Positions 17,838 through 58,257 of a stretch of 64,000 nucleotides of DNA are shown here, piece by piece. Location of the stretch: NCBI GenBank assembly GCA_053919585.1, contig CM132788.1. One strand, written 5' to 3'. Source of the stretch: Euprymna scolopes (taxonomy: Eukaryota). A program made the position numbers and the translations under genes. How positions within the stretch are numbered: the stretch's first letter is position 1; every line of letters begins with the position of its first letter. The notes beneath the pieces were generated by a model. That model was not told where the DNA came from and ran no database searches. It worked only from the letters and a program-made list of their open reading frames with translations.

Positions 17838-19002
17838 TGACACCATGAAGAAAAAAGTCGAGCAAGTACCATTATTATGTGCCGCCTCTATTCAGGTGGC
17901 GGAGGAAATCAGTAAAATACACTACCTAAGTGGCCACCCCGGAGTGAGACTGACATGTTATTTGGTGTAGTTATCCAATCCGTCGGTGTCCAAAAGCGCA
18001 GTGAAAGGGTAGTCAATGAATTCCAAACATGCCAGTCAATCGAACCCGCCTGTGAAGGTCGGCTAGACGCGACTTGGAGCCGATGGGTATGGACATAACC
18101 AACTACGGAAGCCAGCACGTCCTCACCTTGATCGATTGTTGACCGACAAGGTTCGCGATCTGGTGCCCGTTAATAAGACAGGATTACTCCCGTGTCATCT
18201 TTGTATTGGAGTCCATATTATATGAAAGAGAGCCGCCTGAAGAGGTTGTCACAGACAACGACACGTCCTTCTGCAGTTGAGAGAGTTCAGACGTTTCGTA
18301 GACAAGTGAGTGATCAAGCTCAAACATAGATGTGCACATGTGCCAAGGGGCAACAGCATACCAGACCGGTGCATTGAAGCCTGAAGAGGATCGCGGTAAG
18401 AATACAATGCACGATCGCAGAGGTGGCCTATAGATATAATGTAGCACCGAAGGATAGCATGACTGCTGCAAGCGCACCCACCGAAGCGATCTATTGCTCT
18501 CGAGTGCGCATCAAGGATATTGAAGCCTGTCTGCCACATCTGTAGAAACCTGAGGAACGTATGAGTTAGGGGCAACTGTCTAGGTGAAGCCTCTCAATAA
18601 TCGATGCACCAACAACTTTCAAACGGGAGGAAACACTGGTATCTTCAATGAGCAACCGTCCTATTCAATGGTACCTAACGCCGTGTGAAGGATATCCGAC
18701 AAAATACGAAGCAGTTGGCGAGTAGCAGTAATGGTAAATCATCCAACGATCACCTGAAGATCTGAATTATTCCCCGTGATGGTACAACTGCGAACCCCAA
18801 CGCTGACACCGATAGTTCCAGCGCCCATTCTCAGAGATCCGATGAAGTTCAGTTTGATGGTATGACTGTACACCCTAACGCTGAGGTCAATGGTTCCGAC
18901 GCCTCTTTAGAGAGCTCCAATAAAGTGATGTGGTCCAGGCAATCCTCCTTCGTAGGAGTGCCATGTCCATCATGCCACATGTGTGGTCTCGAGACCAGGG
19001 GG
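17838..19002 (+). mobile_element. Gypsy pol remnant, part 2 (integrase) with polypurine tract
   Basis: IHYLSGHPGV..TCQSI (HHCC), GMDIT..LTLIDC, VVTDNDTSF, CAHVPRGNSI; ends with AGGGGG immediately before TG. Confidence 0.88.
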
Positions 19003-19089
19003 TGTAGAGTTGAACGTAATAATCAAAGAAGTAGCCGCTCGTGTGTGTGTGCATTGTGTGGTTATACAACTTACCTTCGGATGGTATCT

Positions 19090-19090
<1 letters not shown>
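19003..19090 (+). mobile_element. Probable start of the Gypsy 3' LTR (right end not defined)
   Basis: TGTAGAG directly after the purine tract at the end of pol. Confidence 0.5.
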
Positions 19091-19122
<32 letters not shown>

Positions 19123-20154
19123 GGAGGGAGAGATTAAAGATGGCAGCATTGGATTTATAAGGTGTAATCTCGTGGAATATCACGAGATCTCATCTTCCAC
19201 TGCACATGTATGCAAATAGGATCGAATCAGTTTTCTAATAAAATACCTGTTGGCAGAGGTGGTTGTGAGAGCACGTGCTGTAATTTTAGAGACAAAGTTG
19301 GCAGTGCCGAATTCTAGCTGAACTTCTGTTTATTGTATTTATTTTTTTCTTGTATACCATCCCATTTAACTGCATACCCAAATCTATAAAAAGTGTAATA
19401 TATATTTCCAAAACAGGGTAAGAAAGAATGTTGGCGATAATTCGAAAGGTGTCTCTCTACTTTACCAGTGAAGTTAAAATTTTATCACACCATGGTTTTA
19501 ATAGAGGCATTTAGAATCTGGTTGATAAAATTCATCAGAAAACTAATGTTGGATCAATTCGAAGTTTGCATGTATTTTAGATTATGCCCAACACCGTAAA
19601 ATATTTCCTAATTAAAAAAAAAATCGTAACATGATCAAAAGGAAAATATGTTGATATGAGTTGTCCATACCCTTCAACAATTTGTTTAAAGGAATCGAAT
19701 CTCCTGAGAAGCGGTAATTACTATGTCCTACTATGCAGATTGCAGAAGCAAGAATCAATAGTGTATGTAGTAATAAAATTAAATATGTTTTTTTTCAGAT
19801 ATTATCGTAACTTTTCTTATGAAGAATTTAATTTAAGCCATATTTACGAGATAGAGAAAAAAACTGTCCAAGTTATTGAATACACATACATATGACTTAC
19901 GTAAAATAGTCTCATGTCTGCTAGAAGTGAAATATGGCCGACATGGCTTTAAAAAGTACACAATTTTTTTTATTGATGTGTGAATTGCCGATGTTCTCGT
20001 ACAAAAGCCATTACAGTGCAGGGAGAAGAGTAGATTTATTGACAGGGTTAAGATCACGAGACCTGTAGTAATTACTAAATCTTACACTAGTGCTTCCAGA
20101 AGCAAAAAAACAAACCAAAAACAGTCATGTATGTAAGCATGCAAATTATTAATA

Positions 20155-20993
20155 CTAGCATGGGTGGCCGGCGTTTCACGGGTGTGTGGAGGTGTGTCTT
20201 GAGCAACAAAAATCGTGGTAATAAGGAAGCATGCTCGAAACCGTACCGAGAAGGAGGAAAATAACGGGGGAAAAACGTGACGACTTTGCTATTACGACCA
20301 CCGCCGAATTGGAAGTTACGCAGGTTTAATTAAGGCTAGACAATCGAAAAGAGAGGATGACTTTCGAAAATATTGGCGGAAAAAAGCGACCGCTCGCTGA
20401 AGAAAGTGCGCAGTTGAGGGTGAAGAAATTAATGTTGTTAGTCAATTTTTCGGTATTTGTCGTCTAAATGGTCGCGGTTCCAAACGATACTGATCGTGCA
20501 AAAATCTGTCGCCTCTATCGAAAGTTCTAGGCAGACATGCAAACATGCATACATACATTTATATGTTGGTAGCTAAAATTTTCGACCCAAACCGATTAAA
20601 AAGCTTGCTCTATCTCTGAATACACTGTCAAATTTCAAATGTTTAGACCAGAAATTGTCTTAATACTTTGCTAGACCTCAAAGGTCAAATTTTTAAAGTT
20701 GACCCCTAGTATGACTCCTTAAGATTTATTGTTTGGGCTCAAATCAAGTTATTAAGCAAGATCCATGTCCAAGGAACCTCTAACTAAAATTCCCATTGTT
20801 TATACCCAAAATTGGCAGACGCATTTGGTAGATTTCTCAAACGTCAAACCGTTGAACTTTGACTCCTTAATAGTCAAAGTTCTGACCGAACACGGATTAT
20901 AAAGATCTTCCCTAACCTCAGTAACCTGTATATCAAATTTCGAGTCTGTGTACTAAGAATTGAAATTTATATTTGACTTTATAGATATATAGA
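20155..20993 (-). mobile_element. Non-autonomous Helitron-like element H1
   Basis: Minus strand 5' TCTATAT...; 3' GC hairpin (cccgtgaaacgccgg) + CTAG; A/T insertion site; internal sequence related to 50850-51419. Confidence 0.7.
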
Positions 20994-21664
20994 TTTTCAA
21001 AAATATAATAGCTTTGTATGTATATAATATTTTTATTCATACACAAACACACAAACACACACACAAACACACACACACGCACGCACACACACATATTTTA
21101 TGCATTTCCACAAAATACAGTTTCAGTGAAATAAAACAATTAGTACTATACGAAGAGTACAATGGGTATTCTGGCTTTATTATAAGTTTCACTAACGGAT
21201 TTATCATTTTAATTTAAGGTATTTGTCATTTCCTATCGTGATCCTGCTCCTGCTATTATATTCCAAAAACGTTTGTGAAAATTCATGAAATATATCTATT
21301 TTGTGCTCATTCCACTGAAACGCAGCCATATCATGGAATCAATTTTCTTTAGACTGAAAGATGCTCATCTATTTTTTTTTTTTAGTTTTTGTAAATTTGG
21401 AATATTTTTTAGAGTTTTATAAATAACTAGCGGGCCTACCCGGCTTTGCTCGGGATAGTATAAAAATAAGAAAATTGAATTTGGTTTAGTAATATATGTG
21501 TTATTCTTATGAGATAGGAATTTGTATGTTTATGTATCATTTGATATTTCGAAGAAATGAATATTTTACCTACATAAGACGGGTATTACAAGTATGAAAT
21601 AATTGTATCTTACCTAGGGTAGGTAATTTACAGCATGTATATGAAAGGACGGGTAATATGCAAC

Positions 21665-22005
21665 ACATTTATCTCATCAAATCCCAAGCGATGCCAGGTA
21701 TGTTACTAATATATATTCTCGCCTATTTCATTAAATCCTGGCCAACGCTGGGTGTTTTGCTAGTATATATCTCAATTAATCTCATTAAATCCTGGGTGAC
21801 GCAAGGTATTCTGTGAGTAAATATTTCAATCAATCTTATTCAATCCAAGGCAACGCCAAGTATTCTGCTAGTATATATTTGCATCTATCTCATTACATCC
21901 CAGGCGACCGTGTATTCTGCTTTCATACATTTGCATGTATCTAATTGAATCCAGGGTGACTCTGGGTAATCTGTAAGTATATATGTGGACGTATCTCGTT
22001 AAATC
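21665..22005 (+). repeat. Tandem array of about 53-bp units (about 6 copies), each a GC hairpin + ..GCTAGT
   Basis: Example unit: tttcattaaatcctggccaacgctgggtgttttgctagtatatat. Confidence 0.8.
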
Positions 22006-23720
22006 CCATAATTCTTGGATTGTTACAAATTTCGACAATTTAACCCACATTATCGCTCACCTGTCTAAAATAATAACTTTGAGACATTGTCTTGGCTGGT
22101 TTTTCATTACAAGCACATCATCCAAATAACTCACATCTCACCATTTTTATAATTGTTGTATATGTAACTATTTTCAACAACCAGGTCACATGATTTCACT
22201 TACATTATCGCCGCCACTCTTACTAAAAACAAACTTTGATACATAGGCTATGGTATGTTACTAATTTCGACTACCACTTTTCATGAGTAAATCCAGATTA
22301 TCGCCCCCATCTATCAGTAAAATAATAACTTTTAGACATGGTATGGCTGGTTATTTCATTACAAACCCACCAAAGAAGTAAGTTACATTATATCATTCCT
22401 CATAATTCTTGGATATGTTACTAATTTTGACACTCATTTTTAATGAAGTAACCAAAAAAATCGCAACACCTTACTAAAATAATAACTTCCATACATTGTC
22501 TTGTCTGTCTACTTCATTACGAATACACCAGTCAAATAACTCACATTTCATCATTTTTCATAATTTTGGGATATGTTGCTAATTTCAAACGTCGTTTTTT
22601 CTGAGTTCAATCCCTCTCCTCTTACTAAAATAATACATTTGAGAATTTTTGGGCTGTTTATTTCATAAGAAACACATCAATAAAATACCTCACATTTCAT
22701 CATTTTTTATAATTCTTGGATATGTTATAAATTTCGACAATCAAATTTAATGGGGGCGCACATCTAATCGCCCAGTTATTACTAAAATCATAAATTTGCT
22801 ACATTGACTGGGCTGTTTATTGCATTATAAACACACACATCAACTAACTAAAGCTTTATTTTTCATAATTCTTGGATAGGTTACTAATTTCGACAATAAT
22901 TTTTCATGAGTTAATCCAAATAATCGCCACTTCTAGCCTGTCTATTTCATTACGAACACACCAATCAAATAACTCACATTTAATCATTTTTCATAATTCT
23001 TGGATATGTTACTAATTTCGACAATCATTGTTTATGATTTAACCCACATAATCGACCCCCCTTACTAAAATACTAACTTTGATACAGTATCTGGTATGTT
23101 TATTTTACTATAAAAACTCCAATCAAATAACTTACATTTAACAACATTTCATAATTCTTGGATATGCTACTAATTTCGACAATCGTTTTTCATAATTTAA
23201 TTCACATAATCCCGTCCCCTTTTGCTAAAATAATAACTTTGATACATTGTCTCTGGTTATTTCATGATAAACTCACCAATCAAATAACTCACATTTTACA
23301 TTTTTCATAATTCTATGATATGTTACTAATTTCGACAATAATTTTCCATGATTTAACACATATAATCGCCCCTCCCTTACTTAAATAACAACCAGGCGAC
23401 ATTGTCAAGGGTGTCTATTTCATTACAAACATACACATCAAATAAGTAACATTTCATCATTTTTCATAATTCTTGGATATGTTACTCATTTCGACAATCG
23501 TGTTTCATGAGTTTACCCACATAATTCCCTTCCTCTTACAAAAATAATACATTTAAGACATCGTCCGTGCTGGTAATTTCATTACAAACACACCAATCAC
23601 ATAACTCACATTTCATCCTTTCTCACTTTTCTTGGATCTGTTACCAATTTCTACACTCATTTTTAATGATGTAACCCACAAAATCGACCCCCTCTTACTA
23701 AAATATTAACTTTAAGACAA
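22006..23720. repeat. Satellite of about 155-158 bp, about 11 copies
   Basis: cataattcttggatatgttactaatttcgacaa recurs at about 22007, 22401, 22559, 22708, 22864, 22992, 23150, 23306, 23465. Confidence 0.92.
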
Positions 23721-24881
23721 CGACTGTATATTATTCTAAAGGTATTCGACAGGAAGCTACATCCAAGGGGGTCTCTCGCAAATTTTATCAATGATTGTAT
23801 ATTATTCTAATGGAATCTGACAGTGAAGCTACATCGAAGGGAGGCCACTTGCATATTATAAGAATGATTGTATATTAATCTAATGGTATTGGAGAATGAA
23901 GCTACATCCAAGGGAGGTCACTTGCATATAATGACAATGAATGTATATTCATATAATGGACATCTATAATGAAAAAACATCCAAGGGAGATCAATTGCAT
24001 ATTACACCAATTATGGTGTATTAGTCTCATGTTATACAACAATGATGCTACATCCAAGGGAGGGCACCTGCATATTATGACATTGATTGTATATACGTCT
24101 AATGGAATTCGCCAATGACGCTACATCCAAAGGGGGCCACTCGCATATTGTAACAACGATTGTCTATTAATCTAATGGAATTCGACAATAAAGCTACATC
24201 CAAGGGAGGTCACCACATATTATAACAATTATTGCATATTAATCTAATGGAATTCGACAATTTGGCTGCACTCAAGGGAGGTCACTTGCATAGTATAACG
24301 ATAATTGTCTATTAATCTAATGGAATCCAACAATGAAGCTACATCAAAGGGAGGTCACCACATATTATAACAATGACTGTGTATTAATCTAATGTAATTG
24401 GGCAATGTAGCTACACCAAGGGAGGTCACTTCCATAGTATAACAATGATTGTCTATTAATCTAATGTAATCCGCCAATTAAGCTACACCGAAGGGAGGTC
24501 ACTTGCATATAATAACAATGATTGTATATTAATATAATGATATTATAAATGAAGCTACATCCAAGGGAGGTAACTTGCATATAATAACAATGGATGTATA
24601 TTAATCTAATGGAATTCGACAATGAAGCTACATCCAAGGTAGATCACTTGCATATTATAACAATTATTGTATATTAATCTAAATGAATTCGACAATGAAG
24701 CTACACCCAAGGGAGGTCACTTGCATATTATAATAATGATTGTATATTAATCTAATATAATTCGACAATGAAGCTTCATCCAAGAGAGGTCACTTGCATA
24801 TTATAACAATGATTGTATATATATCTAATGGAATCTGACAATGAAGCTACATCCAAGGGAGGTCACTGGCATATTATAACA
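23721..24881. repeat. 73-bp minisatellite, about 16 copies
   Basis: catccaaggg at 23760, 23832, 23905, 23978, 24051, 24124 and onward. Confidence 0.95.
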
Positions 24882-24883
24882 TA

Positions 24884-24961
24884 CAAGGTGTTCCAAAAGT
24901 CTTGGGCACATTAAGCAGATATGAGGACTTGAAATGTGCCCAAGACTTTTGGAACACCCTG
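24884..24961. mobile_element. 78-bp Tc1/mariner-type MITE
   Basis: 29-bp TIR ca(a/g)ggtgttccaaaagtcttgggcacatt with 1 mismatch, 20-bp spacer, TA on both sides. Confidence 0.8.
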
Positions 24962-25245
24962 TATATACTGCGCAAGCACCTTCTATTTTTTTCAAATCGG
25001 ACATATACTGCACAAGCACCTCCAAAATTCTCAAATCGGACCTATAATGCACAAGAACCTTCAAAATTTTCACATCAGGCCTATACTGGACAAGCACCTT
25101 CTAAATTTTTCAAATTGGACAAATACTGCACAAGCACCTTAAAAATTGTCAAGTCTGACCTATAATGCACAAGCACCATCAAAGGTTTTCAAATCGGACC
25201 TATACTGCACAAGCACCTTCAAAATTGTCGAATTGGAACTATACT
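24962..25245. repeat. Minisatellite of about 39 bp, about 7 copies
   Basis: Unit tatactgcacaagcaccttcaaaattttcaaatcggacc. Confidence 0.92.
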
Positions 25246-25640
25246 TCCCCTATGTCATACACTCCCAGGCGACGCTTAGTATTCTGCTAGTACACATTCA
25301 CCTATGTCATACAATCCTGGGAAACGCGGGCCGTCCTGCTAGCGTATATACACCTACTTTATCCAATCCTGGGCTATGCCGGGTATTTTGCTAGTACATA
25401 TATCCACCTATGTAATCTATCCCGGGCGACACTGGGCATTAGGCTGGTACATATATTCACCAATTTTTTCCAATCCCAGGCGTCGCCGAGTGTTCGTCTA
25501 GGAAAAATTACATGACTTTTATCCAATGCCAGGCCATGCCTGGTAATCAGCTAGTATATATGTTCTGCTAGTGCTATGTCAAACAATTGAGGGCGACGCT
25601 GGGTATTTTGCTCGTACATACACACCAATTTTATCCAATG
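25246..25640 (+). repeat. Second tandem array of about 52-bp hairpin + GCTAGT units (7-8 copies)
   Basis: Example unit: cctactttatccaatcctgggctatgccgggtattttgctagtacatatat. Confidence 0.85.
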
Positions 25641-27210
25641 CGCATGTTTTTTTTTTACTTGGTCTTTTACTTTGGACATACACACATACATACATTTTCG
25701 CTTTTATATATATAGATTTTTCATAGAGTTTATGGATTAAATCCTCGGCGATTATTTTAGTTCATTATTGTATGTGTATGTAATAGTGCGGTTAGCTAAT
25801 CAATTGTAAGTTTAGGGAATAAAAGTAGGGTTCAGAGGTAAATGATCGTCTGTAAGACGATGGCTTTAACCAAAGTATGGCAACTGATGAAAGTGCGACT
25901 GGAAAAGCGGTTTGTATGTCCTAATTTTTGTGGACGTCTGTAAATAAGCGTATTCAACTTAATTAGAATGTCTTCAAGCCACACCTGTCAATTTGAATTT
26001 GTACGGACAATATTTAATAATAATTTGGTGGATAGTGATATAGAGTCTTATTGCCAAGATGAGCTACACAGGGAGGTAGTAAAATAAAGAGAATGCATTG
26101 ACATCAGTAAAGGCGCCCTCGTTCGTAAGTGTTTCTAATTAGTTATCATTAACGAGCGATGTCAGTTTACGCGGTTTGTTCTAACAACCCCACCCTTATA
26201 ATGTCGTGTCGACAAAAGCAAACGTAATGATGTAAATTATTACTAATGAGATACCAAACAAGACATGAATGAAAACGTGCACTAATTCACTACCAATGGG
26301 GCAATGTTTCGCATCACATGATCTCGAGAAAATATAATCCAATTCTTTAGCCAATAATTCTTACAGCTGATTTATATTATTCTAGTTACTCGAGCTACTA
26401 TATACGTCGTTAATGATATGCTCAATACACTTATCACAGTAAGATTTTTTTTCAACTTGGGGTGCATTTTCCAGAAGTTGGAAATATATACATGTTTTGT
26501 ATTCCAGTCACCAACTATGTTATGCACACATACTTTATATTTTATTATTTGTCAGTATCGCCTGTACTAACGGAAAAAATATTCACTCATGTACACTGCT
26601 TGTGATTCATACAGTTCTTGTATAAATTCGGACAACTTTAAACTTGAACTTATTTAGATGTATAGTATTACTAGTCATTACTATATATTCATATATAAGA
26701 AACATAAGATTTTTACACTCTAATAAAACTAAAAATGTGAGAGAAGAAAATATGCATTTTTTAAAACCAAAACACCTGGTCCTTAAGAAACAATGATGGA
26801 AATTGCATTAAAAATGTTGGGCCCGAGGATTGCGTCTTCCTATACAAATGGTTCTTAGAAATCTGGGGTTCAGATTGCTCATTGGCTGTTTTAATGCCCT
26901 TAATTGAGTTTTACTCTTGAGATTCCCCCCACAAAAAAACAAAATGACAAACGGATAAATGTGGCGACATAGGCGTTAAGGCAATACTACCGAACCTTGA
27001 GATCACGCGATTATCGGACAATTATCGAAGAGCCTACCATGTTTGTCGTGTATTGCGTTATATGACTTTATTCTGTTGTAACAAGTAATCGAGGGTTTTT
27101 AAATGGCGAAATATTTACTTTCTTAAGGTCAAAATCTCACAGTCTTTACACTTGATTATGTTTCGCCATACGCGCTTTAAAATCTGCGTGTTTTGAGGTA
27201 ACCGTATATA

Positions 27211-27269
<59 letters not shown>

Positions 27270-27270
<1 letters not shown>

Positions 27271-28100
27271 TAGCAAAAGTACCCGTCGGTGACTGGGTTC
27301 ACAAACAGCATACAGAAAAAAAAGGAATCTGATTTATGATAGTATGATAGGTTATGAAAAGGAAGGGTTGTAAAGAGATAGCTTCGAATTTGGGATTATC
27401 AAAACCAAAGAAAAATATGATGAAAGTAAAAATAAAATAGATAAACCCCATAATTTCGAACTTGGGATAATCAAAACCAAAGAAAAATATGATGAAACTA
27501 AAAATAAAATAGATAAACCCCATAATTTATTATATCATACCTGTTCACACTGAAACATTATCACAATATTCTTTGGATCTATATTTAAAAAAAAAAAAAC
27601 CTGTAAAACTTTGTGACATATTTCCATTCAATGGAGGTCAGGTGCGAACGAACCTCCCATAATTTTATTATACCATATTTCTTCAAACTGAAACATAATT
27701 ATCAAAGTATACTTACGCAGATAGATATGAAAAGTCTTTATTAAAGTGTGTGCCTATTTCGATCTTATGGAGGCCACGTGCGAACGCAGACCCCACAATT
27801 TTATTATACCATCCATATTTAAGTTAAAACATACTTATCAAAGTATGTACATCTATATCAAAAACACTTGTAAACGTTTCTTTTTTACTTTTAAGTTTCT
27901 TTCCATACTGTGTGGAGCAGGCGCGAGCGCAGACCCCACAATTTTAATGAACCACCGTTCTGCAAGAACAAACATACCCAGTCCTGTCTCGATTGATCTT
28001 CTATCATTATATGGGATCAGTTTTTTTTTTAAATAGTCAACTATATAGGAGCCAATTCGTGACCAGTCACACACACAGACATTCAGCTTTATATTATAAA
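27270..28100 (-). mobile_element. Non-autonomous Helitron-like element H3 with internal tandem repeats
   Basis: CTAG at 27270 next to hairpin cccgtcggtgactggg, abutting (TA)n; 72-bp tandem duplication 27383-27526; about 137-bp unit (cccataattttattatacc) x4; cacacagac..gctttatattata 5' end. Confidence 0.65.
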
Positions 28101-28435
28101 TATACTTTTTCTATCCTTGCATAGTGTAATCCTCTTTTCTATTAGTACACTATTGACCAGCCAGCGTATGCAAGTAACAAGTCTTTAAATATTTTACTTT
28201 TTTAGGTAATTTTTTTATCTTTATATAGTTGTATTCTCTTTTTTATTCTTAAACTTTTTTAGAGGTCAGGTAATGTAGGTGCTACGTCTATGATAAGTTG
28301 AATCTGCAAGATCAAACATACCTATTCCTGTCTCGATATATATTCTATCATTATATGGGATCATTTTTTTTTTAAATAATCAACTATATAGGAGCCAATT
28401 CGTGACGAGACACACACAGATATTCAGCTTTATAT

Positions 28436-28466
<31 letters not shown>

Positions 28467-28486
28467 CTGTATGTATATATATATGC

Positions 28487-28517
<31 letters not shown>

Positions 28518-55177: not shown

Positions 55178-56354
55178 TCGATAGATCCTCTTTTGTACAC
55201 GGTCACCGCTGTATTATTCTGTTTCCTTCTTGATTCAGTAGATTTATCTCGACATATAGTTAGGCATTTAATCATCCGTTAGCTTAATAACATTTCTTTA
55301 TCTCTATTATAAAGAGGTTGTTAGACAATATCCCTTTTCGCGTGATATCAACAATTTCCACTTATTTTCTCATCAGATTGCAATATTTCCTTTTCCAGGC
55401 CATTTCCTCTTTACCTAGCCCCGATTTAAGCAAGGGTTTTTACGCTCATATATTTTAAAGTTGGCTACAAATTCTCCAATATTCTTTCGGGAGATGTTAC
55501 TTCACATTATCCAATTTATCCTAAGGAATCTGGAGAGTCTTCACAGTTATTTACTAAATTTATATTAACATACGTGTATTAAGGTTTGTAACCAGGCGTA
55601 ACTATCTTTGTGTACTTGTAATTTTCTCTTTATTCTGGTAGATGTCTGAGTGTATTATGTTCGTTCTTTTTCTATTAAAACTTTAACATGTTTAACTTAA
55701 GTTGTCATTCATTAGTACGTTTCATTTATTTAATATTTTACTACATTACTAATTAGACATTCTCAAATGAATAAGTACTATTGATGAGTAATTAGTAAAA
55801 AATGTAGAGTTCTCTGTATTTTGACTGTCATCAATATTACTTAAATTCCAGTAGTTCCATGTAAATCGCCTGTCAAAAGATTCTCTTAACCAATTCTAAC
55901 TTCCAGCAGTCGTAAATATTTTTTCTAAAAAGTTTATTAGCAACCAGCCTCCACAGTGTTTTAATAAACTTCGGATGCCATATAATTGTATTTTGTCAGC
56001 TTTTGACATTTATTTGAACTGCCATGATTGTTTTGTATCTTATTACACGATATTAGCGCTTTCACTTGTCAAGGGAGTTCAAGTAAGATTAACTGTCTTA
56101 CATATTAGATTGGTGCAAAAAATTATGTTCTTTTGACGTATATATATTATAACTTATATATATTGTCTGGGCTGATTATTTAATTACAAACACATAAATT
56201 AATTCCGGGTATTCTCATAGTATCCACCTATCTTATCCAATCCCAGGTGACGCCACATATGTTGCTAGTATATATCTTTAACCTATCAAATTCGATACCG
56301 GGTGACACTGAGTATTTTGTTACTACTTGTTGTCCACTTATCTCATTCAAACCC

Positions 56355-56765
56355 GGGACTGACTTCATGCCCGCCAACCCACTATTAAAAATATACATGA
56401 AATAAAGTAATGTTTGAATCGTAACCTGTTTCAGCAATTTCTGGAACTGAGTTTATATCCCCAACCCGCTGCTAAAAATATATATGAAATAATGTAATGT
56501 CTAAATAGTAAATTGTTTTAGCCCTACCTCACTGTCATAAATATACATTAAATAAAGTAATGTTTAATGCGTAAACAGTTTCATCCATTTCCTGGACTGA
56601 TTTCATATCCCCCACACTACTGTTAAAAATATACATGGAATAAAGTAATGTTTAAATCGTAACCGGGTAAAGTAATTTCCGGGACTGAATTCATATCCCC
56701 GCTCCACTGTGTAAAATATATTGTAAATAAAGTAATGTTTAAATCATAAACTGTTTCAGCAACTT
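56355..56765. repeat. Minisatellite of about 88 bp, about 5 copies
   Basis: aaatatacatgaaataaagtaatgttt at about 56388, 56477, 56538, 56626, 56713. Confidence 0.9.
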
Positions 56766-57322
56766 TTCGAAATTAATACATATAAACATTAACACGGCTA
56801 GGGATCAGGCAACCATAGCTCCAATATGAATTTCTGAGTGTAGTGCCAGTCTCAGCATTCCAGTGACTTAAATACTCCCCTGTTTGGTCTTGATTAATTG
56901 GGGAGAAATCCTTCATTACTGATACAATTTTTATTTTTGTTACTGACCAGAATGCCCCTTTAGGTGAGCTAGATTCCCACCCCAATTTTTAACCGACCTC
57001 ATGCCCAATTCTGTCCTTATGGGGAGGCAAGTAAACAAAAAATAATAATCAGAAGGGACATTTTTCAATGCATCTTATAATTAATCAGAAGGGACATTTC
57101 CAGGGCATTTTGTAATTAAATCAGAAATTACTTTTCCTAGTTAATTTTGTAATATTAAAACTTTGTTACATTAAATATAGTACCTATTTACAATCTCTCC
57201 TCAGGGGACAGATTAAGGCACTAGGGTCGTTTTTTAACGTGGAGAAAAGGAACGAAAATTGTCTTAGTCGTAAAGGATTTTTCCTCCACTGAGAGAGAAC
57301 AAATTGAAATGTAGCATCTGAG

Positions 57323-57364
57323 GAACATATACTACACTTTGATCTAGGCCAAAAGGCCAAGAAG
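57323..57364 (-). pseudogene. U2: U2 snRNA 5' fragment (about 42 nt)
   Basis: Minus strand CTTCTtGGCCTTTTGGCctAGATCAAAGTGTAGTAtaTGTTC versus U2 CTTCTCGGCCTTTTGGCTAAGATCAAAGTGTAGTATCTGTTC; includes stem-loop I and the GUAGUA branch-pairing sequence. Confidence 0.88.
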
Positions 57365-58257
57365 AGCAAATCATTTTTGTTAGCTTTGCCGCAACAGCGA
57401 CACCAATTTTTTTTTTTTTTTTTTAATTTAAACGACCCGGATATAAGCGTGACACAAAAAAGAACACACGCGCTATCGTATTAATATATAGATTGCTAGT
57501 GTGAAAATACAATAACCTATTTTTCCTCAATTGCATCTTGAACAAGCGAATCTTTTTCTTTATAATATATCAAGGGCACTTGTAGTATTAAAAATAATAT
57601 GGTTAATACTATCGTAAAAGGTTCGGTTAGGATATAAACATTCTTTACAGTACAATCATGTTCCACCATTTTTCTGATGTTAAAATAGTCAGATGTGAAA
57701 TACAAGATAAGTAGGTTTTAAATTCTTGCGAAAATGAAATGTAGGTCTTTCAAAAATTTCGAAATTCTTCTGATGTTTCAGCATTGGCTTTTGCTTTATT
57801 TTCCCACGTTATCTGCGACGGTGACTTTACTGTGCTTTCTATAATAAAAAAAAAAAATAAAAAAAAAAACTATTTAGTGAAGATACGGAAAAACAAAAAA
57901 CAATACGACAATGCCTTAAGCTAAGCATAAGAAAATGCAATGTCGAAGTTAACGCGTTAGTAATATTGAACAAATTAGAATACATAAAAAAAGTATTTAA
58001 GATGCATGCCGGTATTGCAAAAGGAAAGAAATAGGGCAAATTACTTCATTTTAAAATTGAGTCAACATATATTCTTAGCAGTTACCTATTAAAGTTGCGC
58101 GTTTATCGATGAAAAATGTCTCAAAATAATAGTAAACTATAAAAATATTGCTATAAAGTTAATCGAACCTTTTTGAAACTTCGTAATTATGTCACCTTGA
58201 GAAACACAATTCTAATTGAACCTATGTATAGGAAACCTACATAAATATCATTTATAA

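What the first reader, a model, noticed from the sequence alone, without database searches (positions are those of the whole stretch)
21427..25716. Helitron-like element built as an ordered cassette of four different satellite types
Seen: between a 5' TC end and a 3' hairpin-CTAG end lie, back to back, a 53-bp array, a 157-bp array, a 73-bp array, a MITE, a 39-bp array and a second 52-bp array; over 90% of the 4.3 kb is tandem repeat with sharp junctions. Known: Helitrons/Helentrons often carry one central tandem array and seed satellite DNA. Several unrelated arrays in a bracketed layout is unusual. Inference: a mobile satellite-generating and dispersing vehicle; the 157-bp unit is near nucleosome length.
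Basis: partly seen in the sequence, partly recalled or inferred. Interest (0 to 1): 0.7.

Follow-up and report, generated by a model that had tools for sequence, protein, structure and literature searches.

The report
Helitron carrying an inherited multi-satellite cargo
This 4.3-kb stretch is one decayed copy of an abundant non-coding rolling-circle transposon (Helitron) that carries a fixed series of tandem-repeat arrays around a large animal genome; it spreads those repeats but shows no sign of generating them at each new site.

Summary
Window 21427-25716 is about 91% tandem repeat. It lies between a hairpin-plus-CTAG end at 21427 and a TC end at 25716, read on the minus strand, and sits between a host A and a host T.

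It is a non-autonomous canonical Helitron. At least 24 other copies on many chromosomes show the same modules in the same order between the same ends.

- The two 52-54-bp arrays are one repeat family, made of backward copies of the element's own 3' end signal. So there are three unrelated satellites (157, 73 and 39 bp) plus this terminator-derived repeat.
- The 78-bp MITE is a private later insertion with a TA duplication; 14 sister copies show the empty site.
- This copy has lost a middle terminator block and about 0.8 kb near its 5' end.

The arrays are cargo, not locally made satellites. Repeat units match the same-position unit in other copies far better than their own neighbours. No long free arrays were seen.

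Helitrons with one or two internal arrays are already published, and the scan noted the backward-terminator array elsewhere in this genome. I found no empty site, and I could not retrieve the 3' end of the coding partner.

The parts
21427..25716 (-). Whole non-autonomous Helitron copy (4,290 bp), inserted between host A (21426) and host T (25717)
   Evidence: colinear copies on many chromosomes start and stop at these two points.
21427..21454 (-). 3' terminus: CTAG (21427-21430), an 8-nt spacer, and a 16-nt palindrome-like hairpin (21439-21454)
   Evidence: conserved in all copies examined; folds as a 4+2-bp stem, though the energy is no better than shuffled sequence.
21455..21665 (-). Non-repetitive 3' region of the family (about 210 bp)
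   Evidence: present at constant length (199-215 bp matched) in all 20 fetched copies.
21666..22006 (-). Array A: 6 units (plus a cut seventh) of the 54-bp repeat; each unit is a backward copy of the 3' terminator
   Evidence: constant at 6 units in all 20 copies. The unit core matches the terminus at 15 of 18 bases plus the CTAG.
22001..23726 (-). 157-bp satellite, 12 whole or partial units, with 315- and 442-bp higher-order periods
23712..24882 (-). 73-bp satellite, 15 whole and 2 partial units
24882..24963 (.). Private MITE insertion: 78-bp element (24884-24961) with near-perfect terminal inverted repeats and a TA target duplication
   Evidence: arms; 14 sister copies show the uninterrupted site; absent from all other copies.
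24964..25245 (-). 39-bp satellite, 7 units
25241..25639 (-). Array E: 7 units of the same backward-terminator repeat (52-bp period)
   Evidence: Arrays A and E are about 69% alike.
25640..25675 (-). Remnant of the family's 5' region; about 810 bp present in other copies is missing between 25668 and 25676
   Evidence: L013 5431-6400 matches window 25623-25668 and 25676-25721 only.
25676..25716 (-). 5' terminus (41 bp), beginning with TC on the minus strand (25716-25715); shared with a much larger set of Helitrons

Best explanation
Window 21427-25716 is one copy, on the minus strand, of a non-autonomous canonical Helitron family in a 5.9-Gb animal genome. Earlier scan notes call the organism a mollusc; I did not check that.

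The family's master element already carried an ordered cargo. Read on the + strand it is: a 210-bp 3' region, six backward terminator units, the 157-bp satellite, three to four more backward terminator units, the 73-bp satellite, the 39-bp satellite, seven backward terminator units, a 5' region of about 0.8 kb or more, and the 5' end.

Mobilisation is inferred, not shown. Rolling-circle transposition by a RepHel protein supplied in trans would have copied the whole cassette to hundreds or more A|T sites. The genome holds hundreds of nearly identical coding copies that could supply this protein.

After insertion this copy lost the middle terminator block and most of the 5' region, and it gained a TA-targeting MITE. 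The arrays are inherited cargo. Differences in array length between copies come mainly from master lineages and deletions, with only a small share of local duplication.
For: Termini and target.
- TC and hairpin-CTAG ends flanked by A and T occur in the window and in about 25 other copies.

Family.
- All 34 best-scoring genomic candidates are colinear with the window copy at 81-93% identity.
- All 20 fetched copies keep the module order where the modules are present (one is rearranged and several lack a module).
- Four more loci show the 157-bp array followed by the 73-bp array in the same order and strand, by coordinates alone.
- First-look candidate counts are 8,292 for the whole element, 4,290 for the 157-bp array and 1,162 for the 73-bp array.

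Arrays inherited.
- Same-index units across copies are 0.90-0.97 identical, against 0.60-0.80 for different-index units.
- The nearest relative of 91-99% of satellite units lies in another copy.
- In-register hits reach 91-93% identity, out-of-register hits 77-82%.

Age.
- The 3' region plus array A is 94% identical pairwise (median), 2.7% from consensus at non-CpG sites and 19% at CpG sites.

Other support.
- Coding Helitrons exist: 6,421 candidates for PF14214, ORFs up to 1,603 aa, copies 97-100% identical. Their 5' end shares 14 of its first 16 bases with this family's 5' end.
- A contig from a second sample, differing from the window by five SNPs, bridges the left junction at 21102-21543.
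- The MITE is secondary, shown by 14 paralogous empty sites.
Against: - No empty site for this insertion was found. The flanks are single-copy, raw-read coverage was only about 0.3x per run, and no read skipped the element.
- The 3' end of the coding Helitron could not be fetched. The link to a specific autonomous partner therefore rests on 16 A+T-rich bases.
- The terminal hairpin does not fold better than shuffled sequence (z -0.3 to -0.7).
- Only 34-40 loci per search were actually scored, out of thousands of candidates.
Confidence: 0.9

Rival explanations
1. One reading: the element actively generates satellites. Its rolling-circle replication or its repeats would expand arrays at or after each transposition and seed free satellite DNA.
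For: - Array lengths differ widely between copies: 1-40 units of 73 bp, 1-19 units of 157 bp, and a 1.2-kb 39-bp array in L027.
- 30 of 328 73-bp units have their nearest relative in the same copy.
- Published models derive satellites from Helitron arrays (PMC12628747).
Against: - 91-99% of units are orthologous between copies.
- The best 40 loci for the 73-bp and 157-bp monomers are dispersed arrays of at most about 2.5 kb.
- Read depth on the satellites does not exceed depth on the unique 3' region.
Confidence: 0.15
2. It is a Helentron-type (Helitron2/HINE) element like the oyster and Drosophila satellite carriers, not a canonical Helitron.
For: Animal Helitron-like satellite carriers described so far are mostly Helentron derivatives (PMC7492417, PMC4067079).
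Against: - The ends are TC and CTAG.
- The insertion lies between A and T, not T and T.
- No subterminal inverted repeat pairs the two ends.
- The hairpin lies 8 nt before CTAG.
Confidence: 0.04
3. It is not one element. It would be a local pile-up of several independent insertions and tandem duplications, or a segmentally duplicated region.
For: Head-to-tail chains of different Helitrons are very common in this genome, so composites do form.
Against: The same internal order, the same two ends and A/T flanks recur on at least 20 different chromosome-scale contigs with unrelated flanks.
Confidence: 0.02

Closest known systems
Canonical (Helitron1-type) non-autonomous Helitrons, as defined in PMC4067079 (5' TC, 3' CTRR, 16-20-nt palindrome about 11 bp from the 3' end, A^T target, no duplication)
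   Same: All four structural hallmarks are present in this copy and its relatives.
   Different: About 91% of the body is tandem repeat, whereas canonical Helitrons are better known for carrying gene fragments. A coding partner with a matching 3' end has not been demonstrated.
Cg_HINE / Helitron-N elements of the Pacific oyster (PMC7492417, PMC8268682)
   Same: These are non-autonomous rolling-circle elements whose central part is a short satellite-like array, dispersed genome-wide. A few carry two consecutive arrays (Cg_HINE_10_13 and Cg_HINE_11_12).
   Different: The oyster elements are Helentron-type, with subterminal inverted repeats and T-rich targets, and they usually carry one array. 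Here the ends are canonical, and there are three unrelated satellites plus two to three blocks of terminator-derived units in a fixed order.
Helitrons with multiple termini, and tandem Helitron arrays (maize and Fusarium: PMC3288121, PMC5148889; the plant centromeric arrays of Xiong et al. 2016 as summarised in PMC12628747)
   Same: Extra copies of end signals occur inside or beside an element.
   Different: In those cases the extra ends are co-oriented and are ascribed to terminator bypass or truncated rolling-circle products. Here the 13-17 extra terminator copies are all backward, are decayed (CTAG intact in 56% of units), and are inherited as cargo.
Heli2Xen of Xenopus (PMC12001565)
   Same: Minisatellite arrays sit near both ends of the element, and non-autonomous copies are largely made of them.
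   Different: That family is Helitron2-type with a single 166-bp repeat, and no terminator-derived repeat is reported.

Membership tests
Canonical Helitron (non-autonomous) | 5' end begins with TC | tested here: met
   On the minus strand the element begins with TC at 25716-25715. The same 41-bp end occurs in the other copies.
Canonical Helitron (non-autonomous) | 3' end is CTRR | tested here: met
   CTAG at 21427-21430, and in nearly all of about 25 copies; a few are decayed to CTAA or TTAG.
Canonical Helitron (non-autonomous) | 16-20-nt palindrome about 11 bp from the 3' end | tested here: met
   A 16-nt palindrome-like motif at 21439-21454 lies 8 nt from CTAG and is conserved in all copies. 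It folds at -4.4 to -5.7 kcal/mol, which is not better than shuffled sequence.
Canonical Helitron (non-autonomous) | Insertion between host A and T without target duplication | tested here: met
   A lies before and T after the element in the window copy and in most copies with host flanks. No empty site was obtained, so the absence of a duplication is read from the flanks only. The two flanks of the window copy do share an imperfect similarity of about 17 nt that remains unexplained.
Canonical Helitron (non-autonomous) | A RepHel-coding partner in the genome with matching termini | tested here: inconclusive
   Abundant, near-identical RepHel copies exist. The first 16 nt of their 5' end match at 14 positions. 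Their 3' end was not retrievable.
Helentron / HINE (Helitron2) | TT target, subterminal inverted repeats linking the 5' and 3' ends | tested here: not met
   Flanks are A and T. No inverted repeat pairs the two ends.
Classical satellite DNA | Long homogeneous free arrays with units more alike within an array than between arrays | tested here: not met
   Arrays are at most about 2.5 kb in the best 40 loci for two of the monomers. Units are closer to their positional counterparts in other copies than to neighbours. Only a sample of loci was scored.
TA-targeting MITE (Tc1/mariner-like), for 24884-24961 only | Terminal inverted repeats and a TA target-site duplication | tested here: met
   32-nt arms at 97% complementarity. 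TA lies on both sides, and 14 paralogous empty sites show a single TA.

The most novel reading that the evidence does not exclude
The backward terminator blocks may be more than dead cargo. They may be remnants of one ancestral backward-terminator array into which the satellites were inserted or recombined. The phase data fit this loosely: array A breaks off at about unit position 10, the middle block resumes at position 22, and the middle block and array E meet near a unit boundary.

About a third of all 5' ends of this Helitron group abut another element's CTAG end exactly. Together these observations would mean that this lineage's nuclease uses its own end signals as preferred integration or recombination points. 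That would give a concrete mechanism by which Helitrons assemble multi-satellite cassettes and chains.
Probability: 0.12. Interest if true: 0.6.

Novelty: new variant of a known kind. Interest (0 to 1): 0.35.

Why it matters
This is a clean, well-bounded example of how short satellite-like arrays become scattered over all chromosomes of a large genome. The cause is a transposon copying a ready-made cassette, not local expansion.

For annotation, the 157-, 73-, 39- and 52-54-bp 'satellites' of this genome should be counted as Helitron cargo.

The fixed order of the modules, the backward terminator copies that punctuate the cassette, and the high rate of exact head-to-tail junctions are useful material for studying how rolling-circle transposons recognise their ends and build composite repeats. 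The basic phenomenon, Helitrons carrying and dispersing tandem repeats, is already established.

Tried and rejected
Walking upstream reached the 5' end. The downstream walk returned coordinates only.
2. Looking for the family's terminal sequences or repeat units inside the available parts of the coding copies: nothing beyond the first 16 nt.
3. Testing whether selection maintains the hairpin in the backward terminator units: paired fractions equal shuffled controls, with no compensatory pattern. Function of these units is therefore unsupported.
4. Fold significance of the terminal hairpin: not better than shuffles.
5. RNA families and tRNAs in 21000-26200: only a spurious sub-threshold miRNA-like hit on the MITE hairpin, and no tRNA.
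6. Similarity among the 157-, 73- and 39-bp monomers: none.
7. Empty site: no read or contig skips the element. A joined-flank query was not made because it has no reference, and the flanks are single-copy by depth.
8. A shared junction between this family and the second cassette at 56.1-56.8 kb: only generic unit-level similarity of 70-80%.
9. The big protein searches were not used, because they were not needed for the claim.
Full report
**Observation**

TRF on 19000-28500 and a relaxed run on the element alone show five tandem arrays lying back to back:

| Array | Coordinates | Period | Copies |
|---|---|---|---|
| A | 21666-22006 | 54 bp | 6.4 |
| 157-bp satellite | about 22001-23726 | 157-159 bp (also 315 and 442 bp) | 12 whole or partial units |
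| 73-bp satellite | 23712-24881 | 73 bp | 16 |
| 39-bp satellite | 24964-25245 | 39 bp | 7.2 |
| E | 25241-25639 | 52 bp | 7.4 |

Profile searches give unit-by-unit coordinates. An 84-bp inverted repeat with 32-nt arms at 97% complementarity sits at 24881-24964.

**Ends and orientation**

On the + strand the left boundary reads host A, then CTAG, an 8-nt spacer and a 16-nt palindrome-like motif (21427-21454). The right boundary reads ...TATAGA followed by host T (25716/25717). Read on the minus strand this is 5'-TC ... hairpin ... CTAG-3' between A and T. That is the canonical Helitron signature as defined in PMC4067079. The hairpin folds as expected, but its energy is no better than shuffled sequence. 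Its weight therefore comes from conservation across copies, not from thermodynamics.

**It is a family**

A search of the window's own 5.9-Gb assembly with 21300-25850 found 8,292 first-look candidates. All 34 that were scored are colinear with the window copy at 81-93% identity, and homology begins within a few bases of 21415-21427 and ends at 25668-25716.

I fetched 20 copies from 16 different chromosome-scale contigs and annotated them with the window's modules. Nineteen keep the module order wherever the modules are present; the twentieth (L027) is partly inverted. On the + strand the order is:
- 3' region
- array A
- 157-bp array
- a short block of the 52-bp repeat
- 73-bp array
- 39-bp array
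- array E
- 5' region
- 5' end

Some copies lack one module: L023 lacks the 39-bp array, L026 the 73-bp array, and L029 and L030 are shorter forms.

Left boundaries in about 25 copies all read A|CTAG plus hairpin with unrelated upstream sequence. Right boundaries read ...TATAGA followed by T-rich host DNA or by another element. Searches with the 73-bp and 157-bp arrays alone picked other loci. Where the two lists hit the same place (C13:120.51 Mb, C2:121.45 Mb, C12:65.46 Mb, C23:69.68 Mb), the 157-bp array precedes the 73-bp array on the same strand.

**What is particular to the window copy**

- The MITE is absent from every other copy. Fourteen copies show the uninterrupted site with a single TA, where the window has TA-MITE-TA. 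So it is a later TA-duplicating insertion of a 78-bp element (24884-24961). Contigs from another sample run from the MITE edge into many different sequences, as expected of a multi-copy MITE.
- A block of 1-5 (mostly 3-4) units of the 52-bp repeat lies between the 157-bp and 73-bp arrays in 16 of the 19 other oriented copies. It is missing in the window copy.
- Most other copies have about 0.8 kb or more between array E and the 5' terminus. The window matches only the first 50 bp or so and the last 41 bp of it, so about 810 bp is deleted between 25668 and 25676. In other copies that region holds repeated units with sub-threshold matches to U2 snRNA. Earlier scan notes read these as stacked U2-headed SINEs; I did not test that beyond the Rfam hits.

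**The 52-54-bp repeat**

Arrays A and E and the middle block are one family: 301 units in the window copy plus 19 of the fetched copies, 292 of them in the same orientation. The core of the + strand unit consensus is a GC-rich palindrome, 7 nt, then CTAG. It matches the element's own 3' terminus, read on the minus strand, at 15 of 18 positions of the palindrome region, with CTAG at the same distance. The units are therefore backward copies of the terminator.

They look like decaying cargo:
- CTAG is intact in 56% of units.
- The stem shows no more pairing than shuffled controls and no compensatory changes.
- Array A is fixed at six units in all 20 copies.

A possible history is one ancestral backward-terminator array split by the satellites. 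Array A ends at about unit position 10, the middle block resumes at position 22, and the middle block and array E meet near a unit boundary. This is an inference with modest support.

**Are the arrays made locally or inherited?**

- For arrays A and E, unit i of one copy is 0.90-0.97 identical to unit i of another copy, but only 0.60-0.80 identical to units at other positions.
- The nearest relative of a unit lies in a different copy for 298 of 328 73-bp units, 195 of 197 157-bp units and 120 of 124 39-bp units.
- A four-unit 157-bp query hits each other locus once in register at 91-93%, and out of register at only 77-82%.

The arrays, with their internal divergence, therefore pre-date the family's spread and are copied as a block. 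Copy number does vary (73-bp: 1-40 units; 157-bp: 1-19 units), but only about 9% of 73-bp units look like local duplicates.

No free long arrays were seen. The best 40 loci for each of the two monomers are dispersed arrays of at most about 2.5 kb. In raw reads from three runs, depth over the satellites does not exceed depth over the unique 3' region. This sampling cannot exclude rare long arrays.

**Age and fixation**

- The 3' region plus array A is 94% identical between copies (median). It lies 2.7% from consensus at non-CpG sites and 19% at CpG sites. The burst is therefore not recent, and the CpG loss fits what methylation would cause.
- A contig from a 2019 sample bridges the left junction (21102-21543) and differs from the window by five flank SNPs. 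Another contig starts 23 nt inside the right end and runs into the flank. So the insertion is shared by another haplotype.
- No read or contig skips the element, but raw-read coverage was only about 0.3x per run, so this says little about absence of an empty allele.

**Who moves it?**

The genome has thousands of matches to the Helitron Rep domain (PF14214), many in open frames of 1,486-1,603 aa. Hundreds of these are 97-100% identical to each other. Walking upstream located the 5' end of this young coding family. Its first 16 nt match the 5' end of the non-autonomous family at 14 positions. No further similarity and no arrays were found in its first 2.8 kb. Mobilisation in trans by a RepHel of this kind is therefore inferred, not shown.

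**Comparison with what is known**

- Helitrons and Helentrons carrying one internal satellite-like array are well documented. Two-array elements occur in the oyster (PMC7492417), and a review states that different array types can occur within one element (PMC12628747).
- Xenopus Heli2Xen has minisatellite arrays at both ends (PMC12001565).
- Extra, co-oriented termini are known from maize and Fusarium (PMC3288121, PMC5148889).

This element differs in three ways. It is canonical in its ends and target rather than Helentron-like. It carries three unrelated satellites in a fixed order. Blocks of backward terminator copies punctuate the cassette. I rate it a new variant of a known kind. The scan's own earlier notes reached the same reading of a backward-terminator array elsewhere in this genome.

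**Seen on the way**

- About a third of reads that reach the shared 5' end continue directly into another Helitron's CTAG-hairpin end (186-274 of roughly 500-900 such reads per run).
- In the fetched loci, 11 of 18 5' ends abut a 3' end exactly, and L029 holds four elements in a row.
- Exact CTAG|TC junctions are known from bat and maize. They are explained by insertion at the A|T formed by host A and the element's first T (PMC2267711). The frequency here suggests that resident 5' ends are strongly preferred targets.

**Verdict**

The thing is a decayed copy of an abundant non-autonomous Helitron with an inherited multi-array cargo. It disperses satellite-like repeats, but nothing suggests it generates them at its insertion sites.

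Noticed in passing
window 25716/25717; L029:437-5414; L012:8367; L015:8367; L020:1015; L025:5565; L026:3544; L028:1015; L030:1041: Exact head-to-tail junctions (CTAG directly followed by TC) between different Helitrons are very common. About 30-37% of reads reaching the shared 5' end run on into a CTAG-hairpin end. In the fetched loci 11 of 18 5' ends do so, and L029 holds a chain of four elements. The junction type is known from maize and bat (PMC2267711), but the frequency suggests end-targeted insertion.
   Followed up: partly
L011:6926-7656; L013:5464-5574 (5' region of other copies); window 57323-57367: The 5' region of most family copies holds repeated units with sub-threshold matches to U2 snRNA (31.7-39.2 bits against a gathering score of 46). 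The window copy has lost them. Earlier scan notes interpret them as stacked U2-headed SINEs.
   Followed up: partly
window 56146-57493: A second, distantly related Helitron-like cassette. It has a 157-bp-like fragment, two to three backward terminator units (56221-56316), a different 88-bp array (56530-56762, and by eye from about 56340), a U2-like fragment, and a TC-type end near 57493 on the minus strand. No matching 3' end was seen.
   Followed up: partly
L031-L056 (for example G000:C34:58.42 Mb): A very young coding Helitron family: hundreds of copies 97-100% identical, open frames up to 1,603 aa. The 5' end begins with TC followed by an A+T-rich run and is often preceded by (TA)n or (TCTTC)n tracts.
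   Followed up: partly
window 21404-21426 and 25717-25742: The two host flanks of the window copy share an imperfect direct similarity of about 17 nt (a T run, then AGAGTTT, then AT). A Helitron should make no target duplication. This could be chance or a pre-existing local repeat.
   Followed up: no
3' region plus array A of 20 copies (window 21427-22003 and counterparts): Consensus CpG sites are changed in 19% of cells, mostly to TG or CA, against 2.7% at other sites. This fits germline methylation of these elements.
   Followed up: no
L027 (G000:C24:75.23 Mb): A rearranged copy. The 3' half lies on one strand and the 73-bp, 39-bp and E arrays on the other, and the 39-bp array is expanded to 1.2 kb. 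This is the clearest local array expansion seen.
   Followed up: no
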